Positions 8,411 to 51,902 of a stretch of 59,863 bases of DNA are shown here, piece after piece. The DNA is from Isurus oxyrinchus (Eukaryota). The stretch spans positions 8,556,001 through 8,615,863 of the forward strand of contig JANJGN010000038.1 in NCBI GenBank assembly GCA_026770705.1, read 5' to 3'. The notes beneath the pieces were generated by a model. That model was not told the origin of the DNA. It did no database searches and saw nothing but the letters and a program-made list of their open reading frames with translations. Within the stretch, counting starts at the first letter, position 1; the number at the start of each line of letters is the position of its first letter. Position numbers and translations under genes: made by a program.

Positions 8411-8445
8411 CGCTACCCTCTGCTGGCAGCTCACCGCTACTACAG
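8411..8445 (-). promoter_or_regulatory. candidate CTCF site (core + upstream motif)
   Basis: Minus strand CTGTAGTAGC-ggtgag-CTGCCAGCAGAGGGTAGCG. Confidence 0.5.
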
Positions 8446-8919
8446 GCGGTGCTGTTTGCCAGCCTCAGAGAAGTTCCGTTACTGCATGGTTGCATTTTAA
8501 AACATATTGACGAATTATGTATATGGAACAATACTCTGTCGGATTGAAGTTCGCAGCAGGGTTCGCTCTTTTACCACCTGACGGTGTACATGAACTCTCT
8601 CATCATTCCCCATTGGAGGTATTGGCTGGAGCTGGTTGTTGGGAGTTATTTCAGACTGCAATGTGCATATTTGGTGCAGTTATCAGACTCTAATCTCATT
8701 CAGAATGGGAGTATTTAAACTTTGCTGTATTCTGTAATTCCTCTGCAATACATTGTCAATGTTCAACCCGACACATTGGATCTTGTTAAAGCTTTTTTAC
8801 TACTTATGTCTCGAAGATAATGTTCTCCATTTCTCACATTCTTGGTCCAAGGGGGGAAATTATATATATCAAACACAAACAATATATGGGAGAGAATTTA
8901 TTTTCACATCTTTACAGCC

Positions 8920-9197
8920 TGGTCAGAGAATCTAAAACACGGAGAATGGTCTCAGGATAAGGGGCCGAACATTTTGGTCTGAGATGAGGAGGAATTACTT
9001 CACTCAAAGTGTTGTGAACCTTTGGAATTCTCTACCCCAGAGAGATCTGGATTCTCCATCCACTTTAGTTCGGGATAGGCAGGGTTACAGTGTCTCGGGG
9101 ATTTAAGGGATATGGGCAAAGGGCGGAAACAAGGAGTTGATTGACAGAGCTATCGACGGCCATTCCGCCTACTCCTGCTCCTATTCTTGTGTTCCTG
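8920..9197 (+). mobile_element. CR1 LINE 3' end
   Basis: gagatgaggaggaattacttcactcaaagtgttgtgaacctttggaattc ... cctactcctgctcctattcttgtgttc is a typical CR1 3' terminus. Confidence 0.75.
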
Positions 9198-9529
9198 TAA
9201 GAATCAATGTTAACAGCTTCCACGTTTTCGAGAGTCTGCTCCATAGATCGAACACCCATTGGAATATTAACCTGAACTTTCCAGGTCCATTAGAGGCAGG
9301 CTGGGAGGGGGCAAGGCTGGCACTATGCCGGGGAAGGCGTCAGGAAGCGTGGAGAGAGGGAATCGGTGTCCGTCCCAGGGCCTCGTTTGCTTTGCTCATT
9401 GTTGAAAGATTATCAACTCTTGTCAGTCAGAAACCAGTTTTTATTCTTTTACCATACAGGTTATTTTTTCCATATGTGATTTTTCCTTCCTTAATTCCTT
9501 ATCTCCATGTGACAAATTTTGAATTCCCT

Positions 9530-10300
9530 CCGAGGAATGTTATCCATTGCCTTTCTGCCCATTTTTCACGTATTTAAATCCGCCCATAGCTTACCCTGAT
9601 CAGATGTGCACCTGTGATCTTCAGTAGCCTTTTCCCTCGCTGCAGTTTTAAGCATTGATCTTCTGGCTTCATTTATTATCATCTTAAACTAATGCGGAAT
9701 GAAACAGAACAATGTGGGATCCCAACGTTAATATCCTTCCAGTCCGAATACAATCCCTGTATCATTACAATCTGGAATCTATCAGTCAACTAATTCCGAT
9801 TCCCTTGCAGTCCTCCCTCTGATTGTGGCGATATCTCTTCCAGGGTCCCATCCTTTCCAGAGGAACTGTTTAGAAAGCCGACAGGAATCCAAATGCATCA
9901 CATCCACTGTCTCTCTTGCCCCATGAAGCTCGTTTTGCTCACGTTCAAAGTGATCAGTCAGCTCGATAAGCGAGTCCTTCCCTTCATGGACACTTACTGA
10001 CTGCAATGAAAGGTTCTCCTTCTCTCCACATGCCCCATAAACCTTCCTTTCTTACGGGTTTACGAGGGGTAACTCATTGTGATTTCCTGACTCACTTTTG
10101 CGAAAATTTTACCAAAGAACAATAAACGCTGCATTTTATTTTATCTGCTCGCCAGGCGTCTTTGCAGAATGCAAGCATTTTTCACAGATTTATGACTGAG
10201 AACCTGCAGATTTTTGCTTAATTCCGTAAAAATCCTCGGATGCATCTTATCTGGGCCCTGGATTGATTCAGCTGGATTTCCACAGCTCTTCATTAACCAT
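9530..10300 (-). mobile_element. highly decayed CR1 RT fragment
   Basis: The minus ORF includes LIELTDHFE...ETVDVMHLD, resembling the CR1 RT region TNLIEFFE...VDVVYLD. Confidence 0.5.
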
Positions 10301-10529
10301 GCTGGTGCTAACGTAATAAATGTAGCAATTTACCCCTGAAAGTCCTATGGTCTCATTTGCGGATCAAATGTATATATTAACTGTTCCCTCTTTCATAGAA
10401 GATGAAACAAAAATACATATTTAACGCAATTATAGCCCGGCTAGCATCAGTTGTGTTGCCCTTACTCGATCATATTTTCGCACTCCACCTATGTTATTTT
10501 CTTGTAACAACAACAAAAATATATTATCG

Positions 10530-10935
10530 TTTTCACCCCTTGCCATACGCTGTTTGAAAGGAGTTTTGTTAAAGTTGTCCTGAATCATGATGGACTGGAC
10601 AGAGTAGGCAGGGAGAAATAGTTCCCAATGGTGGAAGATTCGAGAACAAGTGGGCACAGATTTAAGATAATCAGGAAAAGAAGCAACGGCGAAATTTAAA
10701 AATGAACTTTTTTTCGCGCAATGAGTGGTTAGGATTTGGAGTGAACAGGCTGAGATTGTGGTGGAGGCAGATACAATTGATGCTTTCAAAAATAAAGTGC
10801 ATCATTTTCGGAAAAGGGAAAAATGCTGGACTAGGGGGAAAAGTGTGGAACTAGGTCAATTGTTCCTTTAGAGGGTTAGCATGGGCCAGACAAATGGCCT
10901 TTTACTTTTCTGTAAGAATTCTTCGATTCTATGAT
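10530..10935 (+). mobile_element. CR1 LINE 3' end
   Basis: ggactggacagagtag...gggcacagatttaagataat...tttttttcgcgcaatgagtggttaggatttgga; ends ttctatgatt. Confidence 0.75.
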
Positions 10936-10977
10936 TGATATCAGAAACAGTAAATTAAATCAGCATTTTCACAGCAT

Positions 10978-11011
10978 CTGCAATAGCAAGACTTGTCCAG
11001 CAGATGGAACC
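10978..11011 (+). promoter_or_regulatory. candidate CTCF site (core + upstream motif)
   Basis: CTGCAATAGC-aagact-TGTCCAGCAGATGGAACC. Confidence 0.5.
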
Positions 11012-11059
11012 GAAACCGTGATTGCTTAAATTGCGTGAGGCAGGCATTTCTCAATGCTG

Positions 11060-11470
11060 CATTGGCCCTGTCTCCACTCATATCAAACTGGACCCCGTGC
11101 CTGTTTAAATAACACTAGGTCTTGTCATTGATTATGTTAGAGGAGGTTGTGTCCCACTTATTTCTGTATTCGGCCCAATCTCTGCTGTCAGCTTACTCAA
11201 CCAGGCCCTCTTTCTGTTCTGTGAGACACTATCAGTTATTACTGCATGGAACTATGTCTCAGATAACATGACAAAACGTCAGGTCCCAATTGTTAATGCC
11301 TTGTACAATGTTCCCCTTTGTATTAAACTGGAACATATGTCTGTTTGCGTTGCACGAGGCTTTCCCTCAGTTATTACTTGAGTTGACCCTGCCATGTTTA
11401 TATTAAGCTAGAGGAGGTCACAGTGAATGCTGCACAAGTCCATGTTCTGTTTATATAACACGATACCCTG
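11060..11470 (-). repeat. degenerate 27-bp satellite (reverse orientation to the main array)
   Basis: Repeated variants of tgtctcagttattactgcactagaccc. Confidence 0.6.
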
Positions 11471-11479
11471 TCTCTGTTG

Positions 11480-12110
11480 TTAGTGCTGACAGGCTGATTA
11501 ATAAAGCATATGGTATCTGAGGCTTTATATATTGGGGCACAAAGTTCAAAATCAAAGAGATTTTCGAACACAGTTAAAGTCTCAACATGAGCATTTGCGT
11601 CCAGTTCTGGGCACCACACTTTAGGAAAAGTGTGAACGTATCAGTGAGAGAGTAGGAAAGATTCACGAGAATGGTTCCAGGGATGGAGACATTCAGTTAA
11701 ACTGGTAGAGCAGATGAATTGGTACTGCTTTCCATAGAGGAGAAAAGGTTGAGGCAGCAGTTATACATGTATTCAAAATCTAGATGGGTCTGGACAGAGT
11801 TGAAAGTAGAAAACGGTCCAATTGGTGGAAGGATCAAGAACCAAGGGGCACAGATTTAAGGTAATTGGGAAAATAAGCGTTAGCGGCATGAGGAAACGCT
11901 TTTGTTCATGCAGCTAGTGGTTAGGACCTTGAATGGACTGCGTGAGGATGTAGTGGAGGCCGTGACAATCGAGTCATTCAAAATGGGATTGGATAATTAT
12001 ATGAAAAGGAGGAAAACATTTGACCTACGGGGAGCAGACAGAGAGTGGCAGGAGATGAATTAATCCTTCGCAAGACAAGAACAGTAAGAACGAACGGAAT
12101 GGCCTTTAAG
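11480..12110 (+). mobile_element. CR1 LINE 3' fragment
   Basis: cagttctgggcaccacactttaggaaa (QFWAPHFRK), gggtctggacagagt, ggggcacagatttaaggtaattgg. Confidence 0.8.
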
Positions 12111-15330: not shown

Positions 15331-15587
15331 AATATTGCTTAATAAATTTTACTTGATCCATAAATACCACTTATTGAGAACTTGTTTGGTGAGGCGCAAT
15401 TAAATACTCCATTATTATTTAATCAAGAATTCGGAACGTAGATATTTTAACTAAAATGCTTTTATCTCTCAAAATCTCCTAAGCTTTACAGGCCTCCTTC
15501 TGTGCTGCAAGCATTCCGTGATTCAATGATTTATATTTTTATCAATGACCTCACAAGCATTAACTGAAATTGGCATTTAAACGGCAT

Positions 15588-15622
15588 TGATAATAGCAAC
15601 GTGTGTCCAGCAGATGGCAGTG
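15588..15622 (+). promoter_or_regulatory. candidate CTCF site (core + upstream motif)
   Basis: TGATAATAGC-aacgtg-TGTCCAGCAGATGGCAGTG; the core fits CCASYAGRKGGCRS. Confidence 0.65.
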
Positions 15623-15659
15623 AAGCCGAGGTACTTTACATTAAACAGGCATTCTCTCA

Positions 15660-17105
15660 ATTGTTACCGAAACGGACGCTATCTCTGTTCACATTAAACT
15701 AGACTCCGTCTCTGATCATATCACAGGGTCATATTTCTGATGATTTTACAGCAGGTCATGTCTATTTGTTTCCTTACTCAGCCCAATCTCTGTTGTTGAT
15801 ATACCTGATCCGGGCCCTCTTTGTATTATATCAAACCTTCTCTCAGTTATGACTGCACTGAATCATCTCTCGGCTAACATGACATTAGGTCATGTCTCAA
15901 TTGTTACTGAACTAGACCCTGTCTCTTTTAATACTGAACCCGAACATGCTCATGGTTGCATCACACGAGGCTGTGTCTCAGTTTTTACTCTGCCACGTTT
16001 ATACTGAACTTGACAATTTCACAGTTAATGCTGCGCATATAAATTTCTGTTTATATCATACAATGTCCCTTCTCTGTTACTATTGTACTATACCATGTCT
16101 CTCTCATTGCTGCACTTGTCCAGGTTTCTATTGGTATTAATCTACGTACTTGGCTGGGAGTGATTGCACTAGGTCTTATTTTAATTGATATTGCACAAGG
16201 TCCTTTATCAAGTTAAACTGCACTAGACCCTGTGTCAGTTTCCTTACACTAGATTCTGTCTCCTTTATTACTTCGTCAGTCCATGTCTCTGCTCAAATTA
16301 CACACGCTACTGCCTCATCTATTCCTGCACCCAGCACTGCCTCACTTTATAATCCACGAGATCGCATTTCTATTTACGTTACACTAGACCATCTCTCTGT
16401 TCATGTCAGTCTAGGTCATGTCTCTGCTGACATTCCGCTGGACGTTTCCTTGCATGTGTTAATATAGAACTAGACCCTGTATATTTGTATGCAGTGCAGA
16501 CCATGCCTGTGATTATTTTACACAAGGCCACGTCTATTACTAATACGCTGGACCTTGTCTCAGTAATTATTAAACTTGACCCAGTTTTCTTTTCAATTAT
16601 TGGAGATGTTGTATCAATATTCGGTGCACTCTGCCCTGTCTCAGTATTACTGCACCTGACCCTGTCTCGGTTTATATCCAAATGGATCCTTTCATAATAT
16701 TACACCAGTTCCTGCCTCAGTTATATCAGTGCTTGGCCCCATCTCAGTTGTTCTGGAACTATACCATGTCTCTTTTTGTATTACATACGGCAAAGTCCCA
16801 GTTCTTACTGCGCTGGACTAATGGTCCCTATACACAGCACTAAGCTTTATTTTAGTTGTTGCTGCACTACTCCATGTCTCTGCTTATATTACGTTAGCCC
16901 TATCTCTGATGTCTCATAAGTTACAGAAGATGCAGTCGCAGTTATTATTGCACTAGACTCTGCCTTTTTAATGCTAAACTGGACCCCTTTTCATTTTATA
17001 TTGCACTAGTCCTGATCTCTATTATTACTTCAGAAAACAATTTCTTAGCTTAAATTAAGCTAATCCAGCCTGAGTTATTACTGCGCTAGGCTGTGTCTAT
17101 GTGAA
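15660..17105 (-). repeat. degenerate 27-bp satellite (reverse orientation)
   Basis: Repeated variants of tgtctcagttattactgcactagaccc. Confidence 0.75.
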
Positions 17106-22959: not shown

Positions 22960-23530
22960 CAGCGCCAAGGGGCAGTGATTGATGATACAGGGTTTGATGA
23001 ATATAAACGGAGACACGGTCAAGCGCACTGGCTGATGATGCAGGGTTTGATCAGTAACAACTGAGGCAGGGACTAGTGCAGTGATTGATGATACAGGGCC
23101 TAGATTAATATCAATTGAAACAGGGCCTAGTGAAGGAATTACTTATTAAGCTCCTTGATGAATATAAACTGAGAAGAGGTCTAGTAGCAGTGATTAGTGT
23201 AACAGGGTCTAGAGTTAAATGAATTGAGGCATGGTAAAGTGCAGTGATTACTGATACAAGACCGAGATTGATATAAACTGGGACAGTGCCTAGTGCAGCG
23301 ATGACTGTTACTGTGCAGAGATTAATGTAAACTGAGACAATGCCTAGTGAAGGAATTACTGATTAAGAGCCTTGGTGAATATAAAGTGGGGCAGGGGCAA
23401 GTGCAGTGATTACTGATGTAAGGCCTAGATTTATATAAAGTGAGGGAGGGTCAAGTTCTGTGATTACTGATACTGGACCTGGGTTAAAATGAACAGAACA
23501 GAATCTAGTACAGCCATTACCGATACATCA
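22960..23530 (+). repeat. 27/54-bp satellite, proximal block
   Basis: Variants of ctagtgcagtgattactgatacagggcctagattaatataaactgagaca. Confidence 0.8.
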
Positions 23531-24830
23531 CCTGACATAGGTGTACAACCTCATACCCTCACATGGGAAGGGGACTGCATGCTGAGGGAGCTCAGGAATG
23601 CTCTGATTATGAGTCTACTCAAGAAGGGAGACAAGTCTGATTGCAGTAACCTGAAAGAATCCCCTTTGCTGTCATCCAGAGGAAAGATTATTGCAAGCAT
23701 CCTCCTTAGTCACAAACTTACCATGACCACAGAGCGCTTTACAGAGGCGCAGTGACATTTTCTCCCATCGAGAGGCACCATGGTGTTCACTGTGTGACAA
23801 ATCAATGAGAAATGCCACAAGCAGCAGCAACAGCTGCACACGGCCTTGCTCCACATCACAAATGCCTTTTCCTCTGCTGACGATTAAGACACATGGAGTA
23901 TCCCCTCAAATTTGGTGCCGTCAGAAATTTTTCACCATCCTCCATCTGTTCCACAAGGGATTGCAAGCCCTGATCCTCACCAGCGGAACCAGCACGGACC
24001 CCACCTCTGTGAAAACTGGGTCAGACAGGCTTGTGTAACCGCACCAACCCTCTCCTCATTGGTTTCTCTATGTAATAGTTCACCTCACCTCCAGAAGATT
24101 ACCCACAGGTTGGAGATAATCTAGCGAACAGACAGGAAACTGTTGATCCTACACCACATTCAATCCAAAACCAAAATCTCCCAGCATCATTCATTGAGCT
24201 TCAGTAACCTTCTGGTTCTTGTGTGCACCCTTACTGAAAACTGAGCTCCAGTTTATTGCTGACAACTTCTTTGAAGGATATGAAAATATTGGCTTTCCAT
24301 TAAACACCCAGAAAGATAAGACTCACTTCCAAACAGCCCCCAGACCACAAAACCTCCCCCATTGGCAAGATCCTGAAAATGTGGATCTTCTCCAATTCCT
24401 TCGGAGACTCCTCTCTAGGAAGGCAGAAATAGGCAACAAAACTCATCATCGAGTCTAATGCAGAAGGCCAGCCTTTGGCCGACAGACGATCATGGTATTT
24501 GAGGATTAGAATTCCAAACCCAAGTCTCTGGCCATGGTATACTGGGCAGCAGTGATCTCCAAGCACCTAAATGCTTCTGAGCCTTGGACAACGTCGAGTA
24601 AGCACCTCTAAGTTCTGAAGAATTAATACCAGCAGTGCCATTAGAAGGTTCTACAAACCCAATGTAGGAAAGGCAGTCAGACAGCAGTGTCCTCTCTCAA
24701 ACCAACATGCCCAACAGAGAGACCCTCATCACTCAATAGCGACTCTGCTGAGTGGAACATATGGTTCATATGCTGAACACAAAACTCCCAAAGTCATTAA
24801 TCCACTTGGAACTCTGTCTCGGCAGGAGGC
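23530..24830 (+). mobile_element. decayed RTE-clade LINE inserted in the satellite
   Basis: ORF pieces ELRNALIMSLLKKGDKSDCSN...LLSSRGKIIASILL and VKTG resemble an RTE-type RT. Confidence 0.75.
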
Positions 24831-24839
24831 AAATAGAGT

Positions 24840-25280
24840 GCTTGAGGGATGTGCTCAAAGCATCCCAGAAATGTTCGAACATATCTGCCAGTTCATGGGG
24901 GTCCCTAGTTTGTGGCTGACCAAAATCAAAGAAGCTTATTCGGGAAGGCTGATGTCCACTAATATCCTTCAGGGGAGTCACGCCAGGGTCACTCAGCTCC
25001 TGATCCCATTACAGCCTTGGTCTAAACATGGACAAATGAGCTAAAATCTAAAGTTGAGGTGAAAGTAACAGCCTTTGATATGAAGGCAGCATCTGTCAGA
25101 GTGTGGCATCAAGGAGCAAAACTGGAGTCAATGGGAATCAGGGGGGAAACTCTCTGTTGGTCAGTGTCATCTGTAACACAGACGAAGCTGGTTGTGGTTG
25201 TTGGAGAATTAATCATCTCAGTTCCAGAACATCACTGCAGTTGTTAATTAGGTTAATGCCCTAGGTCCAACCATCTTTAG
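24840..25280 (+). mobile_element. CR1-clade LINE RT fragment
   Basis: KVTAFDMKAASVRVWHQGAKLESMGIRG, the same family as 4.8 kb. Confidence 0.7.
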
Positions 25281-28200
25281 CAGAGTCTGCAGATGGCGCA
25301 TTGGGCCTAACAGCCAAATCAGAACATATCGAAGTGGCATGGCAGCATGTCATCCTCGATCCTGAGGGAATGCCTAAGAAGAAGGAGACAGTCTCTAGAT
25401 GAATTTAAACCGAGACAGAACATAGTGCAGTGATTACTGATTCAGGTTCTAGATTAATCTGTACGTCTATTACAGAAACAGGGGTGAGATTGGTATTGAC
25501 TAGAATAGAGTCTAGTGCAGTAATAACTTAACAGACCCTAAGTATTATAAGCGGAGTAGGGGCATTGTGCAGTAATTATAGATACAGTGCCTCGGTTACT
25601 CTAAACTGAGATAGGGCCTATTACAGTGAATGCTGATACAGGGCTTAGAATAAAACAACCTGAGACAGCATCTACCACAGTGATTACAGACACAGGGCCT
25701 AGATTTATATAAACGGAGACAGGGTTTGTTAGTGTAATTTCTGATACAGTTCCTCGGTTAATATAAGCTCAGACAGGGCCTTTTACATTGATTACTAATA
25801 CAGGGCCGAGATTAATTGAAGCTACGACTGGATCTATTACAGAGAGTACTGATGCAAGGTAAAGATTCATATAAACTGAGGCAGGGTCTATTACAGCGAT
25901 TCCTGATACAGGGTCTATATTCATATAAATTGAGACAGGGTCAATCACAATGCTTATTGATACAGGCTCTAAATTAATATTGGCTGTGGGCAGGGTTTAT
26001 TACAGTAATTACCAATACAATGTCTGTATTAATATAAAAAGAGACGTGGTCTATCACAGTGATTACTGATACAAGGTCTGTATTAATATAAAGTCTATTA
26101 CACTGATTATTGATACAAGGTATGGATTGATATCAGCTGAGGCTGTGCTTATCACAGTGACTACTCACACAAGTTTTGGATTAACATAAACTGAGACAGG
26201 GTCTATTCCAATAATTACCAACACAATTCCTGTATTAATATTAACTGACACAGGGTCTATTACAGAGATAACTGATACAAGCTATGAATACATATCAACT
26301 GAGGCAGGGTCTATTACAGTAATTCTGACACAAAGAAAGGATTCATACCAACTGATGCATTGTCTGGGTTAATATAAGCTGAGACGGGGTCTATCACAGT
26401 TATTAATGATAAATGGTCTAGATTAATTTGAATGGAGACAAGGTATATTACAGTGATTACTGATACAAATTATGTATTAATACAAACTGTGACAGGGTCT
26501 ATTACAATGATTACTGATACAACTATGGATTCATATCAACTAATACAGGGCCGATTACAGTGATCACTGATACAATGTCTGGGTTAATATAAACTTGGAC
26601 AGGGTATATTCGAGTGATTACAGATACATGGTATTGATTAAAATTACCTGAGACAGGGTCTGTTACATTTAATAATGATAAATGGTCTGGATTAATATAA
26701 ACTGTGACAAGGTCTATTACAATGACTACTGATACAAGATATGGATTAACATAAACTGAGACAGGGTCTATCATAATGATTACTGATTCAGGGTCTGGAT
26801 TAATTTAAAGCAAGACAAGGTCTATTACAGTGATTACCAGTACAAGGCTTGGATGGATATAAACATAGTCAGGGTCTACTTCAGTGATTAATGATACAAA
26901 GTATTGATGAATAGCAATTATGACAGGGTCTATTATGGTAATTACTGATACATGGTCTAGAGAAATATAACTTGAGGCAGGGTTTATATCAGGGTCTATT
27001 ACAGTGATTACTGATACAGAGTCTAGATTAATATAAATGGAGACAGGGTCAATCACAGTGATTATTGATACAGGATCTACATTAATATAGACTTAGCACC
27101 GGGTCTATTACAGTAATTGCGAATACAATGTCTATGTTAATATAAACTGAAACATGGTCTATCACAGTGATTACTGAAACAAGGTATGTACTAATATAAA
27201 CTGAGACAGGGTCTATTACAATGACGATGGATAAAAGGCATGGATTTGTATCAACTGAGATAGGGTTTATCACAGTGGTTACTGATACAGTGTCTGGATT
27301 AGTATAAACTGAGACAAGGTCTTTTACTTTGATTACTGATGTATGGTACTGATTAAAACAACTTGAAAGGGCCTTTTACAATGACTACCAATACAGGGCC
27401 TAGATTAATATAATAGACAGTGTCTATTATAGTGTTTACCAATACAAGGCTGGGATTGATATAAATTCATTCAGAGTCTACTTCAGTGATTACGGATACA
27501 AGGTATTGATTAATATCAACTGAGACAGGGACTTTTATTTTGATTACTGAGACAAGGTCTGCATTAATATAAACCAAGGCATGGTCTATTACAGTGGTTA
27601 CTGATACAAGGTGTTGATTAACATCAACTGTGTCAGGGTCAATTTCAGTGATGACTGATACAGGGTCTAGATGAATATAAACTGTGTCAAGGTCTATTGG
27701 AGTAATTACTATTACAAGTAATGGACTTACATAAACTGAGACAGGGCGTATTACAGTCATTCCTGATGAAGGGTATTGATTAATAAATTGATGAACAGAT
27801 TTTATTGCAGTGATTAGTGATGCAAGAAATGTCTTAATATCCACTGAGAAAGGGTGTATTAACTTAATTACAAAATTCTATGCCTGTATTACTATAGACT
27901 GAGAGAGGGTATCTAAAAGTTGTTATTGATACAAGGTATGGATTAATATCAACTGAGGCAGGATCTATTACAGTGCTTATTAAATACAGTCTAGATTAGT
28001 ATAAATGGAGACAGGGTCAATCACAATGATTATTGATACAGAATGTAGGTGAATACAGACTAAGGACAGGGCCTATTACAGTAATTACCAATATAATGCC
28101 TGTCTTAATTAGTGATTACTGATATAAAGTATGGATTAATATCAACTGAGACAGAGCTTGTTATAGTGACTACAGATACAAGTTTTTAGATTCACATAAA

Positions 28201-30686: not shown

Positions 30687-30913
30687 AAAAAACTCAGAAG
30701 GTCTGGCAGCATCGGCAGAGAAGAAAAGAGTTGACACTTTGAGTCCTCATGACCCTTCAACAGAACTGAGTGAATCCTGGGCTCATCTTTCCATGAGGAC
30801 TCGAAACATCAATTCTTTTCTTCTCCGCCGATGCTGCCAGACCTGTTGAGTTTTTCCAGGTAATCCTGTTTTTGTTTTGGATTTCCAGCATCCACAGTTT
30901 TTTTGTTTTTTTA
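30687..30913. mobile_element. Penelope-like hairpin (inverted-repeat) element inserted in the satellite
   Basis: The arm aaaactcagaaggtctggcagcatcggcagagaagaaaagagttgac is the inverse of caattcttttcttctccgccgatgctgccagacctgttgagttttt. tctattacagtg is duplicated at 30675-30686 and 30914-30925. Confidence 0.7.
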
Positions 30914-32299
30914 TCTATTACAGTGTTTACTGCTACAAGGTCTGGGCTGGTGTAAATTGAGACAGGGTGTATTACTGTGACTACTGATACAGGGTCTGAA
31001 TTGATATAATCTGATACTGGGTGTAGTACAGTAATTTCTGATGCAGGGCCTAGGTTAATATTCACTGCGACAGGGTCCATTACATTGAACATTGATACAA
31101 GGTCTGTGTTAATTTAAGGTGAGGCAGAATCTCTTTCAGTGATTGCTGATACAATGTATGGATTAATATCAAGTAAGGCAAGGTCTCTTTCAGTGGTTAC
31201 TGATGCAACATATGAATTAATATCAACTGATGCAGGGCCTATTACAGTGATTACTGATACAGGGTCTAGATTTATATAAACTGAGACAGATTCGGATACA
31301 GTGTTAATGATGCAAGGTCTGGACTGGTGTAAACTGAGACAGCATGTTTTACAGTGACTACTGCCACAGGGTCTGTATTGATATAATCTGAAACTCGGTA
31401 CAGGACAATGATCACTGATACAGGTTCTGGATTAATGTAAACTGAGACTGGGTCTAGTACAGTGATTACTGATGCATGGTATGGATTAAAATAAACTGGA
31501 AAGGGTCAATTAATGCGGTTAACGACATAAGGCCTACGTTAATATAAACTGAGAATAGGTCAATTACATTAGTTAATGATACAGGGCCTAGATTAATATA
31601 AACTGAGACAGGCTCAATTACAGTGATTACTGTTAAATGGTCTCAATTAATTTAAACATATACTCAGTCTATTACAATGATTACTGATACAGGGTCCAGG
31701 TTAATTTAAACTGAGACAAGGCCTATTGAAGTGATTACCAGTACAATATCTGCATTAATATAAATAGCAACAGTGTCTATTCAAGTGAATACTGATACAA
31801 GGCATGGATTAATATAGATGGAGCCAGTGTGTATTACTGTGAATACTGATACAGGTTATGGGTTAATATAAACTGAGGTAGGCTCTATTACAGCATTCAC
31901 CAATACAATATCTATGACTATATAAACTGAGAAAGGGTATTTTAGAGCGATTATTGATTCAAGGCATGGATTAATATAAACTGAGACTTGGTCTATTATA
32001 GTGATTGCTGATACATGGCATTTATTAACATAAACTGAGACACAGTCTATTACAGTGATAACCAATACAAGGCCTGGGCTGATATTAACTGAGACAGGGT
32101 CTATTCCAGTGATTAACAAGACAAGGTCTATATTGATATAAAGTGTGCCAGGGTTTTTACAGGGATTACTGATACAAGGTATTGATTACTATCAACTGAG
32201 GCAGGGCCTCGTATGGTGATTACTAATACAAGGTTTGTATTAATAAAAACTGAGACAGGGTCTCTTTCAGTGCTTACTGATACAAGACATGGATTAATA

Positions 32300-33555
32300 T
32301 AAACTGAGACAGTGTGTATTACAGTGAATACTGAAACAGGTTATGCGTTATTATAAACTGAGACAGTGTGTATTACAGTGAATACTGAAATAGGTTATGG
32401 GTTATTATAAACTGGGACAGTGTGTATTACAGTGAATACTGAGACAGGTTATGGGTTATTATAAACTGAGACAGTGTGTATTACAGTGAATACTGAAACA
32501 GGTTATGGGTTATTATAAACTGGGACAGTGTGTATTAAAGTGAATACTGAAACAGGTTATGGGTTATTATAAACTGGGACAGTGTGTATTACAGTGAATA
32601 CTGAATCAGGTTATGGGTTATTATAAACCAGGACAGTGTGTATTAAAGTGAATACTGAAAGAGGTTATGGGTTATTATAAACTGGGACAGTGGGTATTAC
32701 AGTGAATACTGAAACAGGTTATGGGTTATTATAAACTGGGACAGTATGTATAACAGTGACTACTAAAACAGGTTATGGGTTATTATAAACTGGGACAGTA
32801 TGTATAACAGTGACTACTAAAACAGGTTATGGGTTATTATAAACTGGGACAGTGTGTATTACAGTGAATACTGAAACAGGTTATGGGTTATTATAAACTG
32901 GGACAGTGTGTATTACAGTGAATACTGAAACAGGTTATGGGTTATTATAAACTGAGACAGTGTGTATTACAGTGAATACTGAAACAGGTTATGGGTTATT
33001 ATAAACTGGGACAGTGTGTATTACAGTGAATACTGAAACAGGTTTATGGGTTATTATAAACTGAGACAGTGGGTATTACAGTGAATACTGAAACAGGATA
33101 TGGGTTATTATAAACTGAGACAGTGGGTATTACAGTGAATACTGAAACAGGTTATGGGTTATTATAAACGGAGACAGTATGTATAACAGTGAATACTGAA
33201 ACAGGTTATGGGTTATTATAAACTGAGACAGTGTGTATTACAGTGAATACTGAAACAGGTTATGGGTTATTATAAACTGGGACAGTGTGTATTACAGTGA
33301 ATACTGAAACAGGTTTATGGGTTATTATAAACTGAGACAGTGGGTATTACAGTGAATACTGAAACAGGATATGGGTTATTATAAACTGAGACAGTGGGTA
33401 TTACAGTGAATACTGAAACAGGTTATGGGTTATTATCAACTGGGACAGTGTGTATTACAGTGAATACTGAAACAGGTTATGGGTTATTATAAACTGGGAC
33501 AGTGTGTATTACAGTGAATACTGAAACAGGTTATGTGTTATTATAAACTGAGACA
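32300..33555 (+). repeat. homogeneous 54-bp sub-array (~23 near-identical units)
   Basis: aactg(a/g)gacagtgtgtattacagtgaatactgaaacaggttatgggttattata repeated with few changes. Confidence 0.95.
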
Positions 33556-35361
33556 GTCTCTATTATAGAAATTACCAATACAATATCTGTATTTATATAA
33601 ACTTATAAAGGTTATTTTGCAGTGATTATTGATACAAGGCATGGATTAATATAAACTGAGACTGGGTCTATTACAGTGATTACTGATACATGGTATTGAT
33701 TAACATAAACTGAGACAGGGTCTATTACAATGATTACCAATACAAGGTCTATATTGATATAAAGTGTGTCAGGGCTTTTACAGGGATTACTGATACAGGG
33801 TATTGATTACTATCAACTGAGACAGGGTCTCTTACAGTGATTAACAAGACAAGGTCTATATTGATATAAAGTGTGTGAAGGTTTTTACAGGGATTACTGA
33901 TGCAAGGTATTGATTAAGATAAACTGAGACAGGGTCTATTACAGTAATTACTGATACAAGGTTTGTGTAATATAAACTAAGCCAGGTCTATTTCAGTGCT
34001 TACTGATACAAAACATGGATTAATATAAACTGAGACAATCTGTATTAGAGTGAATACTGAAATAAGTTATGGGTTAATATAATTTGAGGCAGGGTCTATT
34101 ACAGCATTCACCAATGCAATGTCTGTATTTATATAAACCTAGAAAGGGTTTTACAGTGAATGTTGATACAATGCATGGATTAATATAAACAGACTGGTTC
34201 TATTAAAGTGATTACTGATACATGGTATTGATTAACATAAACTGAGACAGGATATATTACAGTGATTACCAATACAAGGCCTGGGTTGATATTAACTGAG
34301 ATGGGGTCTATTCCAGTGATTAACAAGAAAAGATCTATATTGATATAAAGTGTGACAGGGTTTTTACAAGGATTACTGATACAAGGTATTGATTACTGTC
34401 AACCGAGACAGGGTCTCTTACAGTGAATACTAATACAAGGTTTGTATTAATATAAACTGAGACAGGGTCTCTTGCAGCGGTTACTGATACAAGGTATGGA
34501 TAATATCCACTTAGGCAGGGTTTATTACAGTGATTACTGATACAAAGTCTGTATTCATATAAACAGAGGCAGGGTCTAGTGCAGTGATTACTGGTAAACG
34601 GCCTAGATTAATATCAACTGCTACAGAACAGGATTACTGATACTGGGCCCAATTTAATAAAACTGAAGCGGGGCATAAAGCGATAATCTCTGAGCCTGCC
34701 CTGAATGTAAGTCAACCAGGGATAAATCTGCTGTGGAAACAATTGATGCAGGGCTTTGAAGCATATTGAGAGGGACAGAGAGTAATGCAGTTATAATTAA
34801 TGCATAACCTAGTGTAATATACAGAGAGATAGGGTTTAGTGTTACATCATTAGAAACATCTTACTGCGCAATATAAGTGTATTAATATCGAATTAACATA
34901 AGCCCAAGCAACACTGATCCATTTGCCAGTGGAACAGCTTCTCCCTAAATATTCAAAAGCACCCCTCACACGTTGGACTATTTCTGATAAACCTATCCTA
35001 TGATTCTCGTTGAGTAGGAGAGCAATCCCAGTTTCTTGTTGTGCAGAGAGTGAGGGGTAGTGCAAACTTAAGTTCTAGGAAATCTTCTGTCTTGTTACTT
35101 TGAAATTAGCATTTAACAATTGTTGACACTGTTATAAGGGGCCAACCGAAATAAAGTGCACTGTTACAACAGGGTCAGGCTAAAACACCGGGCTACAATG
35201 CAACGGATCCCTTACAACTAAATTGATGTGTGTAAGACTGGAGCCTGCTCCTGAACTTTAGATACATAGAACCAAATGTTATAATTTCAAAATAGCAACT
35301 GCGACATATCCAGTGCCTTGCATTAGTGGATCTCCTACATGGACAGTAACCACTACTGAAC

Positions 35362-40822: not shown

Positions 40823-41122
40823 CCACCCCCCCCACCCCCACACCCCCCCCAACCCTCCCCCCCCACCCCACACCCCCCCCCCACACCTCCCCCCCACCAC
40901 CTCCCCCCACCCCCCACCCCCCACCGCCCCCCCAACCCCACCACCCCCCCCCCACCCCCACCCACCCCACCCCCCCCACCACCCCCCCCACCCCCACCCC
41001 ACCCCCCCCACACCCCCACCACCCCCCCCCACCACCCCCCCCACCCCCACCCCACCCCCCCACACCCCCCACCACCCCACCCCCCCCACCCCCCCCCCCC
41101 CCCACCACCCCCCCCCACCACC
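40823..41122. repeat. C-rich low-complexity tract (C-runs punctuated by A)
   Basis: About 300 nt almost exclusively C and A. Confidence 0.9.
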
Positions 41123-41390
41123 TTACATGTTTTTTTCCCAAAGGGACTCCAGATAAAGAGCAAGGTGGTTAACTTTGAATCTCCCTCTAAACATTCTCAG
41201 TGTGCAGTCATTTTTATTAAATGGCCACGAGAATCAGCAACCTGAGCACAGTCAGTAAAGCCAGACGGCATCAACCGAGGCACAGGCAAAGACACAGGCA
41301 GTCCAATTAACTGTATAAAATTCTCTGAACGATCTTCTGTGGACATCTCCCACAGCTGAGAAACACGGAACGCAGGCTAGCGGAAACACA

Positions 41391-42172
41391 ACAAGAACAA
41401 CAAAAAAGAACAAAGAAAAGTACAGCACAGGAACAGGCCCTTCGGCCCACCAAGCCTGCGCCGATCATATTGCCCGTCAACTAAAACATTTTGCACTTCT
41501 GGGGTCCATATCCCTCTCTTCCCATCCTATTCATGTATTTGTCAAGCTGCCTCTTAAACATCACTATCGTACTTGCTTCCACCACCTCCTCTGGCAGCGA
41601 ATTCCAGACACTCACTACACTCTGCATAAAAAACTTGCCCCGCACATCTCTGTAGTTTTCTCCTCTCACCTTAAATCTATGTCCCCTAGTAACTGAATCT
41701 CCCACCCCGGGAAAATGATTCTGACTGTCTACTCTGTCCATGCCACTCATAATTTTGTAAATTTCTATCAAGCCGCCCCTCAATCTCAGTCCCTCCAGTC
41801 AGAACAATCAGAGTTTCTCCAACCTCTCCTCATACCTAATAACCTCCAGACCAGGCAGCATCCTGGTAAACCTCCTCTGCACCCTCTCCAATGCCTCCAT
41901 ATCCTTCTGGTAATGTGGCGACCAGAATTGCAAGCAATGTTCCAAGTGTAGGCTAACCAAGGTTCTATACAGCTGCAGCATGACTTCCCAGCTTTTATAC
42001 TCAATACCCCTGCCAATGAAGGCAAGCTTGCCATATGCCTTCCTGACTACCTTATCCACCTGCGTTGCCACTTTCAGTGACCTGTGGACCTGTATACCCA
42101 GATCCCTCTGCCTGTCGATGCACTTAAGGGTTCTGCCATTTACTGTATAATTCCTGCCTGTATTAGACCTTA
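41391..42172 (-). mobile_element. well-preserved 5'-truncated CR1 LINE
   Basis: Minus ORFs KAYGKLAFIGRGIEYKSWEVMLQLYRTLV...CLQFWSPHY and RGGLIEIYKIMSGMDRVD...TRGHRFKVRG, plus an intact 3' terminus. Confidence 0.93.
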
Positions 42173-42178
42173 CAAACT

Positions 42179-44290: not shown

Positions 44291-44489
44291 GAATCATAGG
44301 GTCATTGAAATCCACAATACGGAAGAGGGGCATTCGTCCCAGTGAACAAGCAGTAATCAGCCTTGTCAACTTTCCAGCTCTTGGTCTGTAACCTTTTAGG
44401 TTGTTTCACTTCAAGTTTTTACAACCCTTTCACATCATGAGTTTTAGATTCCCATCATCCTTTGGGTGAAAACATTTGCCGTGACCTAT

Positions 44490-46200
44490 TTACTCTAGAA
44501 TGAAGGGGTCGACAGTACTTTAGCCAGATTTGCTGATGATACCAAGCTGGAAAAGGAACCAGGTTCTGAGGAGGACACTAAGAGGCCACAATGACATATT
44601 GGTAAGCTAAGTGATTGTGCTGATGGAATATAAGGTTGGAAAAATATGAGTTTGCCTAATTTTGCCAGATAAGTCGAAAGGCAACATGTTGTTGACTGCA
44701 GAATTCTTCGGTGCAGAGAGATCTGTGTGTGTTTGTACACGGATCACACAAAGCATGCGGGCACAGCAAGGAGTTAGGAAGGCAAAGAAAATAACCTCTT
44801 TTATGCAGCATTGTGTTACCTCAGCTTCCTTTGTTCAAAAGTAAACAAACCTAACCTATCCTCCCAAATAGCAATCCTCCTGCAGTCGAGGCAATGTCGT
44901 CATAAATCTCCCCTGTAACGTTTCTAGCCCAATCAAATCTTTCATATTGTTCCTGGCCCAGGGCTGCACCAAACACTCTAACTCGGGCCTAACTATTGTT
45001 TTACACAGTTCCAGCAGGACGTCTCAACTCGTATATTCTATGCCTCGGAGAATAAAGGCAAGAATCCCATCTGTTTCTTGATCAATTTATCTACTTGTCA
45101 AGGCACCTTTACGAATATCTGCATTCGATAGTCCCACTTTACTTCTCAGTGTCGTATCATTCGTGAATCAGTGGCAGTCACTATCTCAGAATGCGCTGGA
45201 TGCCGGGGTGCTGAATACATTTAAGGAGGAGAAAGACAGATTTTTAATTAGTAATGGGTTGAAAGGTTACAGGGAGAGGATAGGAAATTGGAGTTGAGGC
45301 CGAAATGAGATCAGCTATGATCGTAATGAATAGCGGGGCAGGCTCGGTGCGCGGAATTGCCAACTCTTGCTCCTAGTTCTTATGTTTTATTTACTGTTTA
45401 TTACTCTATCTTGTTAGCTTTCCTTAAATGCACTACCTCGCAAACATCTCTAAGCCATTCTTATGTCTACCTGACTGGTCGATTTCCTGCAGTATACAGC
45501 TTTTTGCTCAATTCTTAATCACACAGCCAATTTGTGTATCATCTAAAGCCTTCTTAATCATGCTCTTTTCAGTCATGTGCAAGTAATTGATATATGCAAG
45601 AAAAGGCAAGTGTCCTATTACTAAGGCCTGGGGGATACCACTCCCGTTTACAGAAACACCCCGTGTCATTTACCGTTTGCTTCCTGGCAATGAACCAATT
45701 TTGGATTTACCTCGCCGCTTTGCCCTGGATCACATTGGCTTTTAATTTCAGAACCGCTCTGCCATGTAGAACCTGGTCATTTTAAAATCCATATACACTA
45801 CATCGAATGCATTGTATCCATCGGCACTCCTTATTATACCTTCAAAACATTTATGCATAATAGTCAGACTCGCCCTTCGTTTAACAAATTCTTGCTGTCC
45901 AGCTTTGCTTACTCAGTGTCATTCTAAATGTCTCATAGAATGTTCTCTTTCCAATACTATTCCCTGCTCCAAGATTATATTCAGTGTCCTGTAATTACTC
46001 AGTCTTATACCTTTCTGCGTTTTGAACAAGGGCACAACGTTAGCTGTCCTGTCGCCCTGTCTCAGTGCCTGAAGTTGCAAAGGATTATAAAGTAGTGGTG
46101 ATTCTTATGCCGAGGGTACAATTCTGGCGAGCCTTGGCATTTATGCATTTTAAAAGGTATTAAACCGCTTGATACTTTCAAAATGGTGGCAATTCGCCAT
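44490..46200. mobile_element. cluster of CR1 fragments in both orientations
   Basis: + strand agatttgctgatgataccaagctg (RFADDTKL) at ~44.53 kb, a minus-strand RT remnant at 44.8-46.1 kb, and a + strand CR1 3' end at ~45170-45390. Confidence 0.7.
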
Positions 46201-46402
46201 TTCTAAAGGGGAATTGGGAGTCGGTAGACATGTTTGACTTAACAACTATTCCAAATCAGTCGATAATAAATAAGTAAAACATTAGAGACTGTCTAATGTA
46301 ATATAAACCATCCATGCCCATCCCTACATTACGCTAGGCCCCTTTTCAGTCATTGCCGCCTGAGGCAGTGCTGGTTTGGTATGATTTAGGCAAACCAACT
46401 TA

Positions 46403-46437
46403 CACTGTCATCTGGTGGCCAATCGTTGCCATTACTG
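46403..46437 (-). promoter_or_regulatory. candidate CTCF site (core + upstream motif)
   Basis: Minus strand CAGTAATGGC-aacgat-TGGCCACCAGATGACAGTG. Confidence 0.55.
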
Positions 46438-48005
46438 CTATCGTGAAAATGTCGACGTTCGTACTGTTGTTGATAGAAACGTATCAACAAACAAATTTGC
46501 ACTTATATTCCACTCAACGCATTTTTAATGAAAGGGAATTAAATGCTGTAAGAATAACTGGTGAAGCAAATCCACCTTTGTGGAAGTAACTTGCAAACAT
46601 TGGGAATAATGTGTCTTGTATGCACACACTCACAGACACAAATAGACGCAGATACATATGTTGAGTCTCAGTCACACAACCAGTAACCACGGAAAACGTG
46701 AATGTAAAGGCCCTCAGGAGAAACATTCCTTAACATTAAAACACGGTGTACAATAGACACAACAGAGATTTCCACTAATCTTTATGAACTGCAATGCGTT
46801 CTGGCTCACCTATCCTTCAGTCCCTCAATCCAGTTCAAATTTTCGAGATTGTCATAAGATTCGACCAGTACTTTCAACAAAACTGTGACATAACACCGAG
46901 CAATGGGAAATTGTACACAGCTCCTGATGGCTGTGACCAAGACAAAACGTATTTTACAACAAACAAAAATCCATCTTCCCACCCAGTCAAATATATGTTC
47001 TTTAATTATTATGAGACATACTTCTCCCTTCATCCATCTGTCCATTTACCTATCACAGAAAAAAATGCTGTACCACAATAACTGACATTGGCAATAGATT
47101 AATATAAACAAAGTGTCCAGTGCTGTCATTACAGAAAAGAGGCCTTATTTAACATAAACAGCGATAAGGACTCCTGCACTCTGAGCAGTTTAGTCCATGA
47201 ATAACTATGGCAGACCCCGTCGAATATAAACAGGGAGATGGCCTCATGCACTTTAAAGGTGGGCATAAAATAGTGCAGAAATAAAGGAGAAAGGGTCTAG
47301 TGTAATATAAATAAGGACATGGATGAGTACAATATAACCAGACACATGCTTCAGTGCAGCAATAACTGAAAAAGTGCCTAGTGTAAAGGATGGATGCGCA
47401 CAGAGTTTATTGCACCAATGTCCGTGACTGGACCCAGTAGAATATGGACGGAGACATGGTCAGGTTATGGCCTTGCAAACCCCTTCAGTAACTTGAACAC
47501 ATCTTTTAAAACATCTCTTAACTCTCTCTGCTCTAGGATGCTATTTCTATCGTTTTTCCACATAACGGAAGCCCCTCACCCCATTTTGATAAATCCTACG
47601 ACAGCATCTTCAGAACCCGAGAGCTCTGCGACATAGAAGGACAAGGACAGCAGGTGAATGGAAGCACCAGCAACTGCTAGTGCCGCTCCAAGTCACACAC
47701 AATATTCTGATTTGGAAATATAGATTTTTTTCCTTCGTTGGTATTGAGTCAAAACCCCAGAGCTCCCTTCCCACCTGCACTGTTTTTGGATTTGAAACAC
47801 ACACAAGGCGGCTCACCAACACATTTTCCAGGGCAATTAGGTTTGGTTAGTAAATGTCGGCCTTGACAGAAATGTCAAAATCTGAGAACGAAGTAGAGCT
47901 AGCAATAACTGAGTGAAGGTCTGCTGTGATATAAACATAGACATGCTTTGGAGCAGTAATAATTGAGGCAGTGTATGTATGTTTCCATGGAAGCAATCGC
48001 GCTAG

Positions 48006-48040
48006 CACTGCCACCTGGTGGCGAAAGATTGCCATTGCTG
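48006..48040 (-). promoter_or_regulatory. candidate CTCF site (core + upstream motif)
   Basis: Minus strand CAGCAATGGC-aatctt-TCGCCACCAGGTGGCAGTG; the core fits the consensus. Confidence 0.7.
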
Positions 48041-51894: not shown

Positions 51895-51902
51895 TATAAA
51901 TA
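51895..51902 (+). promoter_or_regulatory. TATA box of the V promoter
   Basis: TATAAATA 98 nt upstream of the leader ATG at 51993. Confidence 0.65.

What the first reader, a model, noticed from the sequence alone, without database searches (positions are those of the whole stretch)
8411..48040. Five CTCF-like sites with identical upstream-motif spacing in a -,+,+ ... -,- layout: possible insulator architecture beside an Ig cluster
Seen: sites at 8411(-), 10978(+), 15588(+), 46403(-) and 48006(-). Each has a CCASCAGRKG-type core and a related 10-mer (CTGTAGTAGC, CTGCAATAGC, TGATAATAGC, CAGTAATGGC, CAGCAATGGC) exactly 6 nt upstream. Established: CTCF zinc fingers 9-11 read an upstream motif at 5-6 nt spacing, convergent sites anchor cohesin loops, and CTCF elements limit RAG scanning at mammalian Igh. 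Inference: a divergent boundary at 8.4-11 kb and a convergent ~31-37 kb loop ending ~4 kb before the V promoter could wall off this cluster. This is a candidate mechanism for why shark Ig clusters rearrange mostly autonomously. I am not aware of this being described, but cannot search.
Basis: partly seen in the sequence, partly recalled or inferred. Interest (0 to 1): 0.8.

Follow-up and report, generated by a model that had tools for sequence, protein, structure and literature searches.

The report
Repeat-borne CTCF-like sites beside shark Ig
Five good matches to the binding site of the genome-folding protein CTCF do lie upstream of this shark antibody gene, but four are old copies of one repeated "motif head plus minisatellite tail" element, so their identical layout is inherited and an insulator role is still an untested guess.

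Summary
All five sites exist as described. Each has a 10-mer, 6 nt, a TGN triplet and a CCASYAGRKGGCRSY-type core, 34 nt in all. Core matches with at most 1 mismatch number 6 against 0.18 expected; 0 of 100 shuffles reach 6.

The sites are not five independent events. Sites 10978(+), 15588(+), 46403(-) and 48006(-) are about 65% identical copies of one module. The module is a roughly 150-nt head, followed in three of the four by 54-bp satellite units. The identical spacing is therefore inherited. Site 8411(-) shares only the motif.

The core is the best-kept part of the heads: 0.79 pairwise identity against 0.51 elsewhere. This is a modest hint of constraint.

The orientation pattern is not statistically unusual. 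The convergent pair encloses satellite DNA, not the Ig cluster. No occupancy data could be reached.

This scan has seen the same module near other Ig clusters of this genome. One case was followed up (s1-300803) and reached the same verdict; eight more first-reader notes are unchecked.

Verdict: these are repeat-borne, probably CTCF-competent sites carried along with the Ig cluster's duplicated flank. A dedicated insulator function is possible but unshown.

The parts
8412..8445 (-). Site 1: two-part CTCF-type motif (core 8412-8426, U-like 10-mer 8436-8445). No demonstrable homology to the module outside the motif.
   Evidence: Head HMM E=0.051 over HMM positions 20-97. Flanks are not family-like, p=0.09.
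10927..11485 (+). Module copy with site 2: the head (about 10927-11060) carries U 10978-10987 and core 10997-11011, followed by 54-bp satellite-like units.
   Evidence: 10927-11485 matches 15537-16085 at 66.9% over 568 nt. Tail versus satellite scores 25 against a null maximum of 20.
15537..17102 (+). Module copy with site 3: the head carries U 15588-15597 and core 15607-15621, followed by about 1.4 kb of degenerate 54-bp units.
   Evidence: (tail score 29 against a null maximum of 19).
46290..46513 (-). Module copy with site 4: the head 46361-46508 carries core 46404-46418 and U 46428-46437. It has only a short, weakly satellite-like tail.
   Evidence: 46361-46508 matches 47964-48109 at 65%, E 1e-10. 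The tail is not significant (score 11 against a null mean of 11).
47964..48115 (-). Head of the module copy with site 5 (core 48007-48021, U 48031-48040), 3.97 kb upstream of the V-gene ATG.
47116..47535 (-). 54-bp satellite-like tail belonging to the site-5 head. Another interspersed repeat (about 47595-47888) separates it from the head.
   Evidence: Satellite-part HMM hits at 47379-47295, 47464-47419 and 47177-47116. 39172-39402 matches 47305-47535. The intervening repeat matches 5575-5776 and 7600-7906.
22972..34620 (-). Main 54-bp satellite block, same unit as the module tails. It lies in minus orientation relative to the heads and has no recognisable head at its edge.
   Evidence: TRF, period 54, up to 120.7 copies. 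Tail-part HMM hits run throughout. The head-only HMM finds nothing there.
51896..52506 (+). Germline Ig V gene: TATA-like box at 51896, leader ATG at 51994, V exon ending about 52467, then heptamer CACAGCG, a 23-nt spacer and the nonamer ACAGAAACC.
   Evidence: Direct reading. The V-exon ORF 52182-52517 hits Pfam V-set at 1.5e-13. It is 80% identical to a Scyliorhinus torazame hypothetical protein.

Best explanation
The five sites are genuine full-length (core plus upstream part, 34 nt) matches to the vertebrate CTCF motif. Four of them are the best-preserved stretch of four old copies of one repeated module. The module is a roughly 150-nt head, followed on the 3' side of the core by a 54-bp minisatellite in three of the four copies. 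The identical spacing and the related 10-mers are inherited from that common ancestor, as in rodent B2 SINEs, which spread a fixed-spacing two-part CTCF motif.

The two copies 4.0 and 5.6 kb upstream of V lie in DNA that is itself multi-copy in this genome. They probably travelled with the Ig minilocus when it was duplicated (inferred).

The sites can probably bind CTCF and, if bound, would stall cohesin in an orientation-dependent way (inferred). The plus pair at 11 and 15.6 kb would stop extrusion coming from the Ig side. The minus sites would stop extrusion coming from upstream. That this was selected to make the Ig cluster autonomous is not shown.
For: - Paralogy. Pairwise BLAST gives s2-s3 194 nt E 3e-19, s4-s5 149 nt E 8e-13, s2-s5 E 2e-9, s2-s4 E 8e-7 and s3-s5 E 3e-7. 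Extended matches are 10927-11246 vs 15537-15857 and 10927-11485 vs 15537-16085.
- Head plus tail. The 3' part of the module HMM hits the 54-bp satellite all over the window. Three of four tails are satellite-like beyond all 200 shuffles.
- No decayed heads. The head-only HMM finds exactly the four heads, plus s1 marginally.
- Motif is the best-kept part. Core 0.79, U 0.68 and the rest 0.51 pairwise identity. The core window ranks first among sliding 15-column windows.
- Motif geometry fits the published two-part motif (PMC3368268, PMC12885311, PMC5006368, passages).
- B2 SINE precedent for repeat-borne full motifs with fixed spacing (PMC3368268, passages).
- Multi-copy flank. Of 2447 contigs of run X1 laid on 45000-50900, 165 were at least 99% alike, 378 were 95-99%, 980 were 90-95% and 924 were under 90%.
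- Sharks have an 11-finger CTCF with the cohesin-binding YDF motif (PMC7471279, passages).
- An earlier follow-up on another Ig cluster of this genome reached the same reading (s1-300803). It is a lead, not independent proof.
Against: - No transposon hallmarks were found: no target-site duplications, terminal repeats or Pol III boxes. With four copies at about 65% identity the element ends are fuzzy, so 'mobile element' is not shown. It could instead be an old local duplication.
- At 85% likeness or more, the bins holding the heads are no deeper than their neighbours. The repeats at 45.0-45.4 kb and 47.56-47.95 kb are far deeper. The tool warns that depth is not copy number.
- Site 1 cannot be tied to the family.
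- The 10-mers match the published upstream consensus CAGCTGTTCC at only 2-6 of 10 places (my count against the text of PMC12885311).
- The constraint signal rests on four sequences.
Confidence: 0.75

Rival explanations
1. The sites are a selected insulator architecture: a divergent boundary at 8.4-11 kb plus a convergent 31-37 kb loop. It isolates this Ig minilocus from loop extrusion and RAG scanning, and explains why shark clusters rearrange autonomously.
For: - Strong two-part motifs.
- The motif is the best-conserved part of old repeat copies.
- All 4 detectable heads keep a core with at most 1 mismatch.
- A substitution seen in contigs of a second organism (46411 T>C) changes core position 8 from A to G, which the motif allows.
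- Nine other notes of this scan (one followed up, eight first-reader only) describe the same module upstream of, or bracketing, other Ig clusters. One has a five-site layout of 39361 letters against 39630 here. All except s1-300803 are unchecked.
- Rearrangement occurs only within a minilocus (PMC2435157, abstract passage).
- CTCF elements impede RAG scanning in mouse Igh (10.1101/2020.01.01.891473 and PMC10293834, abstracts in search listing).
Against: - Four of the five sites are copies, so spacing and layout carry little independent weight.
- The orientation pattern is not unusual (4 of 8 patterns).
- The loop would enclose satellite DNA, not the cluster.
- The V-proximal sites face away from V, and nothing lies between V and D/J.
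- V, D and J lie within about 2 kb, so proximity alone may explain autonomy.
- Other noted module-bearing clusters on this piece are 0.5 Mb or more away.
- Trans-rearrangements of IgM/IgW V to TCR-delta D are common in sharks (PMC12227049, passage).
- Recurrence at other clusters can be simple co-duplication.
Confidence: 0.15
2. The modules matter as recombination substrates, not as protein-binding sites. Unequal crossing-over between satellite arrays duplicated the Ig miniloci. Direct copies of 'head plus array' therefore end up at the edges of each duplicated unit, and the CTCF-like motif is a passenger.
For: - The modules end in tandem arrays of very different length, from about 0.07 to 1.4 kb, plus a 12-kb block of the same unit.
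- The whole stretch 45.4-50.9 kb is multi-copy at 85-95% likeness.
- Other notes speak of 'direct copies' bracketing clusters (unchecked).
Against: - It does not explain why the motif is the best-kept part of the head.
- No duplication junction was mapped here.
- s4 and s5 are about 65% alike, far older than the 85-95% paralogues.
Confidence: 0.2
3. The conserved block is read by a different factor. Candidates are an E-protein, since the cores of sites 2-5 contain the E-boxes CAGATG or CAGGTG, or the testis paralogue CTCFL.
For: - The E-box is seen by direct reading.
- Sharks have CTCFL (PMC7471279, passages).
Against: - Conservation covers the whole 15-nt core plus an upstream block at the CTCF-typical distance, far more than a 6-nt E-box.
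- Site 1 has CAGAGG, which is not an E-box.
Confidence: 0.05
4. The matches are chance.
For: None beyond the general frequency of weak motif hits: 7 against 3.5 expected at 2 mismatches.
Against: - 6 hits against 0.18 expected at 1 mismatch or fewer, and 0 of 100 shuffles reach 6.
- Even counted as 3 independent events this exceeds expectation.
- The 10-mer of site 1 matches at 9 of 10, while 0 of 34 other core hits exceed 7.
Confidence: 0.01

Closest known systems
SINE B2 (and other SINE)-borne CTCF sites of mammals (Schmidt et al. 2012, PMC3368268, passages read)
   Same: A repeated element carries a complete two-part CTCF motif, so all copies share one fixed M1-M2 spacing by descent. The copies are scattered in both orientations.
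   Different: - Only four copies were seen here, and they are old (about 65% identity).
- There are no SINE features.
- The head is joined to a 54-bp minisatellite.
- Genome-wide copy number and CTCF occupancy are unknown.
CTCF-binding elements of mouse Igh (IGCR1, VH-associated CBEs, 3' CBEs) that shape RAG scanning (abstracts in listing only)
   Same: CTCF-type sites lie next to rearranging Ig gene segments. The sites are oriented, so an effect on loop extrusion is conceivable.
   Different: - There is no site between V and D/J.
- The nearest sites are 4.0 and 5.6 kb upstream of V, both facing away from it.
- They are repeat-borne.
- There is no functional evidence.
CTCF sites in or beside tandem repeats (for example macrosatellites such as DXZ4; recalled, not checked in a call)
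   Same: A CTCF-type motif is physically coupled to a tandem array.
   Different: Here the motif sits once at the edge of the array, not in every unit. The 54-bp unit shows no significant similarity to the motif-bearing part of the head.
The same 'motif head plus minisatellite tail' module reported by this scan upstream of an IgM cluster 8.39 Mb away (s1-300803)
   Same: A reverse-oriented pair lies 4-5.6 kb upstream of V. The span there is 1625 letters against 1638 here (46403-48040). The module was found four times in that window as well.
   Different: It is a different cluster. I could not see that sequence, so homology is inferred from the matching geometry and from the multi-copy nature of 45.4-50.9 kb.

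Membership tests
Vertebrate two-part CTCF binding motif (M1 core + M2/upstream) | Core matching CCASYAGRKGGCRSY (consensus recalled) | tested here: met
   0-1 mismatch in all five sites. 6 hits against 0.18 expected.
Vertebrate two-part CTCF binding motif (M1 core + M2/upstream) | Second motif on the 5' side at fixed distance, giving a 33/34-bp site (PMC3368268). Linker about 5 nt, range 2-7 (PMC12885311). | tested here: met
   10-mer + 9 nt + 15-nt core = 34 nt in all five sites. The 10-mer lies at -26..-17 from the core centre.
Vertebrate two-part CTCF binding motif (M1 core + M2/upstream) | Sequence of the upstream motif resembles the published consensus (CAGCTGTTCC as worded in PMC12885311) | tested here: inconclusive
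   2-6 of 10 identical positions (hand count). The published logos are in figures that are not held. The five 10-mers agree well with each other (CWGYAATRGC, 7-10 of 10).
Vertebrate two-part CTCF binding motif (M1 core + M2/upstream) | CTCF occupancy in vivo | not testable with these tools
   No ChIP or CUT&Tag data were reachable. A CTCF binding landscape for cloudy catshark is said to exist (PMC7471279, citing Hara 2018, which is not held).
Transposon-borne CTCF sites (B2 SINE type) | Several dispersed copies homologous beyond the motif | tested here: met
   Four copies with 93-568 nt of homology, E from 8e-7 to 2e-34.
Transposon-borne CTCF sites (B2 SINE type) | Transposon hallmarks (defined ends, target-site duplication, Pol III boxes or terminal repeats) | tested here: inconclusive
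   - None were seen by eye.
- The only tRNA or Rfam hit in the window is at 1255-1349.
- The element ends are fuzzy at 65% identity.
- Joints skipping 46312-46513 and 47948-48177 in some contigs are ambiguous ('between: not known').
Transposon-borne CTCF sites (B2 SINE type) | High genome-wide copy number | not testable with these tools
   The genome is not searchable here. Depth at 85% likeness or more shows no excess over the flanks (with the tool's caveat).
Igh-type recombination insulators (IGCR1-like) | Sites placed between V and D/J, or flanking the recombination centre | tested here: not met
   There is no core hit with 2 mismatches or fewer between 48.1 and 59.8 kb. The nearest sites are 3.97 and 5.58 kb upstream of the V ATG.
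Igh-type recombination insulators (IGCR1-like) | Measured effect on RAG scanning or rearrangement | not testable with these tools
   This needs experiments.

The most novel reading that the evidence does not exclude
Each catshark Ig minilocus carries, as part of its duplication unit, its own set of oriented, full-length CTCF sites recruited from a 'head plus minisatellite' repeat. These sites are kept by selection as loop-extrusion barriers that confine RAG scanning and enhancer action to one cluster. That would be a repeat-derived, cluster-by-cluster forerunner of the IGCR1 and 3' CBE system of tetrapod Igh.
Probability: 0.15. Interest if true: 0.75.

Novelty: new member of a known kind. Interest (0 to 1): 0.35.

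Why it matters
How sharks keep tens to hundreds of Ig miniloci rearranging one at a time, and only within a cluster, is an open question (PMC2435157). If the module's sites bind CTCF and recur at fixed places around clusters, each minilocus would have a built-in chromatin boundary. That would link repeat-driven spread of CTCF sites to the early evolution of antigen-receptor loci.

As it stands, the finding mainly shows that the 'designed-looking' regularity is inheritance from one repeat. This is a caution for all the similar notes this scan holds on this genome.

My searches found no paper on CTCF at shark Ig clusters:
- 41 papers hold the terms, 15 were listed, and none is on this topic by title.
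- 25 papers hold the terms, 10 were listed.
- 13 papers hold the terms, 11 were listed.
- 'CTCF' occurs 0 times in PMC2435157 and in PMC12227049.

Hara et al. 2018 and all supplements could not be read and may bear on this.

Tried and rejected
1. Is the motif-bearing head a diverged unit of the 54-bp satellite? Local alignment of the head (5' end to core) against a satellite trimer gave p=0.14-0.74 against 500 shuffles for all five sites. Rejected.

2. Is site 1 an old copy of the module? Its flanks against the family flanks gave p=0.16 and 0.15, combined 0.09, against 2949 random window places. The head HMM gave E=0.051. Not shown.

3. Are there decayed heads at the edges of the other arrays (18.1-18.8, 22.7-34.9, 38.1-38.6, 39.2-39.4 and 40.5 kb)? 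None were found by the head HMM or by the relaxed core scan.

4. Do substitutions in the core favour degenerate positions? Variation occurs at 4 of 7 degenerate columns and 2 of 8 fixed columns (hand count). The sample is too small to mean anything.

5. A JASPAR matrix scan was not possible, because no matrix is on the machine. I used a recalled IUPAC consensus instead.

6. Looking at other Ig clusters directly. The V ORF found only 2 proteins. The position of the module at other clusters therefore rests on unchecked notes.

7. Pfam on 9 other ORFs of the window gave no family, so no transposon protein could be named.

8. The search of earlier findings by sequence gave a blank.

Full report
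**What is there.**
The five sites were read directly. In motif orientation each is a 10-mer, then 6 nt, then a TGN-like triplet (CTG, TGT, TGT, TGG, TCG), then a 15-nt core. The whole spans 34 nt.

The cores carry 0 or 1 mismatch to CCASYAGRKGGCRSY, a consensus I recalled and did not take from a call.
- With at most 1 mismatch the window has 6 hits: the five sites plus 1347-1361(-). Dinucleotide shuffles give 0.18 expected, and 0 of 100 shuffles reach 6.
- With at most 2 mismatches there are 7 hits against 3.52 expected, and 4 of 100 shuffles reach 7.
- With at most 3 mismatches there are 39 hits. Only the five sites carry a 10-mer scoring 7-10 of 10 against CWGYAATRGC at the fixed offset. The sole exception is 6923(+), which scores 7 of 10 with a 3-mismatch core.
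- Because that 10-mer consensus comes from sites 2, 4 and 5, only site 1 (9 of 10) tests it independently.
- The sixth strong core, at 1347(-), has no such 10-mer (2 of 10).

**Fit to the known motif.**
- Schmidt et al. describe a 20-bp M1 plus a 9-bp M2 forming a 33/34-bp two-part site (PMC3368268, passages).
- A 2026 paper gives an upstream consensus 'resembling CAGCTGTTCC', read by zinc fingers 9-11. It describes a usual 5-bp linker (range 2-7) and a TGG-like triplet before the core (PMC12885311, passages).
- ChIP-exo protection linked to the upstream motif lies at -16 and -25 from the core centre (PMC5006368, passages).

The shark 10-mers lie at -26..-17, and the sites span 34 nt, so the geometry fits. 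The letters of the 10-mers fit the printed consensus only partly: 2-6 of 10 by my hand count. The logos are in figures that I could not see.

In the little skate, the mammalian matrix MA0139.1 marks ATAC peaks at TAD boundaries with an orientation bias (PMC10115646, passages). Catshark CTCF has 11 zinc fingers and the YDF motif (PMC7471279, passages). Reading these sites as CTCF-type in a shark is therefore reasonable.

**They are not independent.**
Aligning 261 nt around each site showed similarity well beyond the motif.

| Pair | Aligned length | Identity | E-value |
|---|---|---|---|
| s2-s3 | 194 nt | 66% | 3e-19 |
| s4-s5 | 149 nt | 65% | 8e-13 |
| s2-s5 | 93 nt | not noted | 2e-9 |
| s2-s4 | 93 nt | not noted | 8e-7 |
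| s3-s5 | 152 nt | not noted | 3e-7 |

No pair involving s1 reached E below 0.3.

Searched against the whole window, s2 matches s3 over 10927-11246 vs 15537-15857 and over 10927-11485 vs 15537-16085.

An HMM of the four copies showed that their 3' part is the 54-bp satellite. That satellite fills about 23-34.6 kb and forms small arrays at 11.2-11.4, 15.8-17.1, 18.1-18.8, 38.1-38.6, 39.2-39.4, 40.5 and 47.1-47.5 kb. The tails of s2, s3 and s5 align to the satellite with scores of 25-29 against null maxima of 18-20. The tail of s4 does not.

A head-only HMM finds just the four heads, plus s1 at E=0.051. Four of the five sites are therefore copies of a 'motif head plus minisatellite tail' module, and their identical spacing is inherited. 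Site 1 shares the motif only (p=0.09 for its flanks).

**Is the motif kept?**
Within the four heads the 15-nt core has 0.79 mean pairwise identity. The 10-mer has 0.68, the 9 nt between them 0.54, and the remaining 122 columns 0.51. The core window ranks first among all sliding 15-column windows.

All 4 of 4 detectable heads keep a core with at most 1 mismatch. In contigs of a second, closely related organism (runs X6, X12, X16), position 46411 reads C. That turns core position 8 from A to G, and the motif allows both.

These are hints of constraint. They rest on four sequences and on an alignment that naturally anchors on its best block.

**Setting.**
The Ig V gene is real. A TATA-like box lies at 51896 and the leader ATG at 51994. 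The V exon ends at about 52467 and is followed by CACAGCG, a 23-nt spacer and ACAGAAACC. The V exon hits Pfam V-set at 1.5e-13. Its best protein match is a Scyliorhinus torazame hypothetical protein at 80% identity. Sites 5 and 4 lie 3.97 and 5.58 kb upstream of the ATG.

I laid contigs of four runs on 45000-50900.

| Run | Contigs laid | At least 99% alike | 95-99% | 90-95% | Under 90% |
|---|---|---|---|---|---|
| X1 | 2447 | 165 | 378 | 980 | 924 |

The other three runs give similar spreads. The whole stretch upstream of V therefore exists in many diverged copies.

Several contigs join 46311 to 46514, or 47947 to 48178, skipping the heads. The tool marks these joints 'between: not known', so I leave them unexplained.

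**Earlier notes of this scan.**
After I had found the paralogy, the scan's notes showed a followed-up finding 8.39 Mb away. It describes a reverse pair of CTCF-like sites 4-5.6 kb upstream of an IgM V gene, judged to be old copies of a 'motif head plus minisatellite tail' module (s1-300803). Its span of 1625 letters compares with 1638 here.

Eight more first-reader notes, none of them followed up, describe the same module upstream of, or bracketing, other Ig clusters. One has a five-site layout of 39361 letters, against 39630 here. These notes are leads. They suggest the module is part of the duplicated cluster unit, which by itself does not show function.

**The proposed architecture.**
Counting the same-orientation pairs (s2, s3) and (s4, s5) as one unit each leaves three units. 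Four of the 8 possible orientation patterns contain a convergent pair, so the layout is not remarkable.

By established knowledge (recalled), cohesin is stalled at the N-terminal side of CTCF, which lies at the 3' end of the core.
- The plus sites at 11 and 15.6 kb would stop extrusion arriving from the right, the Ig side.
- The minus sites at 8.4, 46.4 and 48.0 kb would stop extrusion arriving from the left.
- The convergent loop (11-48 kb) would contain satellite and old repeats, not the cluster.
- No site lies between V and D/J.

A buffer-loop function is conceivable but not required. V, D and J lie within about 2 kb. Shark clusters rearrange only within a minilocus (PMC2435157, abstract passage). 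Yet trans-rearrangements of IgM/IgW V to TCR-delta D are common (PMC12227049, passage).

**Verdict.**
Its regularity is explained by common descent from one repeat module. The closest known case is the spread of full two-part CTCF motifs by B2 SINEs (PMC3368268). The sites are plausible CTCF sites, and a dedicated Ig-cluster insulator remains an untested possibility, at about 0.15.

My literature searches listed no paper on CTCF at shark Ig clusters. Hara et al. 2018 is said to hold catshark CTCF binding data, but it is not held here. Supplements were closed.

Noticed in passing
window 1255-1361 (-): A strong CTCF-type core (CCACTAGCGGGCGCT, 1347-1361) abuts the 5' end of an intron-containing tRNA gene at 1255-1349 (Rfam tRNA, 55.2 bits). 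ARAGORN calls it Tyr(ata). From memory it looks like the intron-bearing tRNA-Ile(UAU) type. The core has no upstream 10-mer (2 of 10).
   Followed up: partly
window 22972-34620: A block of about 12 kb of a 54-bp satellite, up to 120.7 copies in one TRF row at 62-85% matches. It is strongly CpG-depleted (observed/expected 0.06-0.23 at 26-34 kb). The unit is the same as the tails of the CTCF-like modules.
   Followed up: partly
window 40826-41122: A tract of about 290 nt that is almost pure C with scattered A (TRF period 1, 50 and 55). It is a candidate i-motif or G-quadruplex region on the other strand.
   Followed up: no
window 45000-45393 and 47561-47954: Two stretches with far higher summed contig depth than their neighbours: 54,000-269,000 and about 6,700-7,400, against about 500-1,200 in run X1. 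They are high-copy interspersed repeats. The second sits between the site-5 head and its satellite tail.
   Followed up: partly
window 46311-46514 and 47947-48178: Some contigs of both organisms join these points, skipping 202 and 230 nt that contain the heads of sites 4 and 5. The tool says 'between: not known'. They could be paralogues without the head, or copies with a diverged head.
   Followed up: no
window 58942-59655 and 59789-59863: A 32-bp satellite with 97% matching units (22.4 copies) lies between N-masked stretches at the window's end. The N stretches were left alone.
   Followed up: no
window 10583-10868 and 11777-12068: Two copies (67.8% identical) of another old repeat flank the site-2 module on both sides. 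Further copies lie at 41525-41937 and 20650-21214.
   Followed up: no
window 53773-58000: No ORF of 70 aa or more downstream of the V-D-J region looks Ig-like. The constant exons may lie beyond the window or in shorter ORFs.
   Followed up: no
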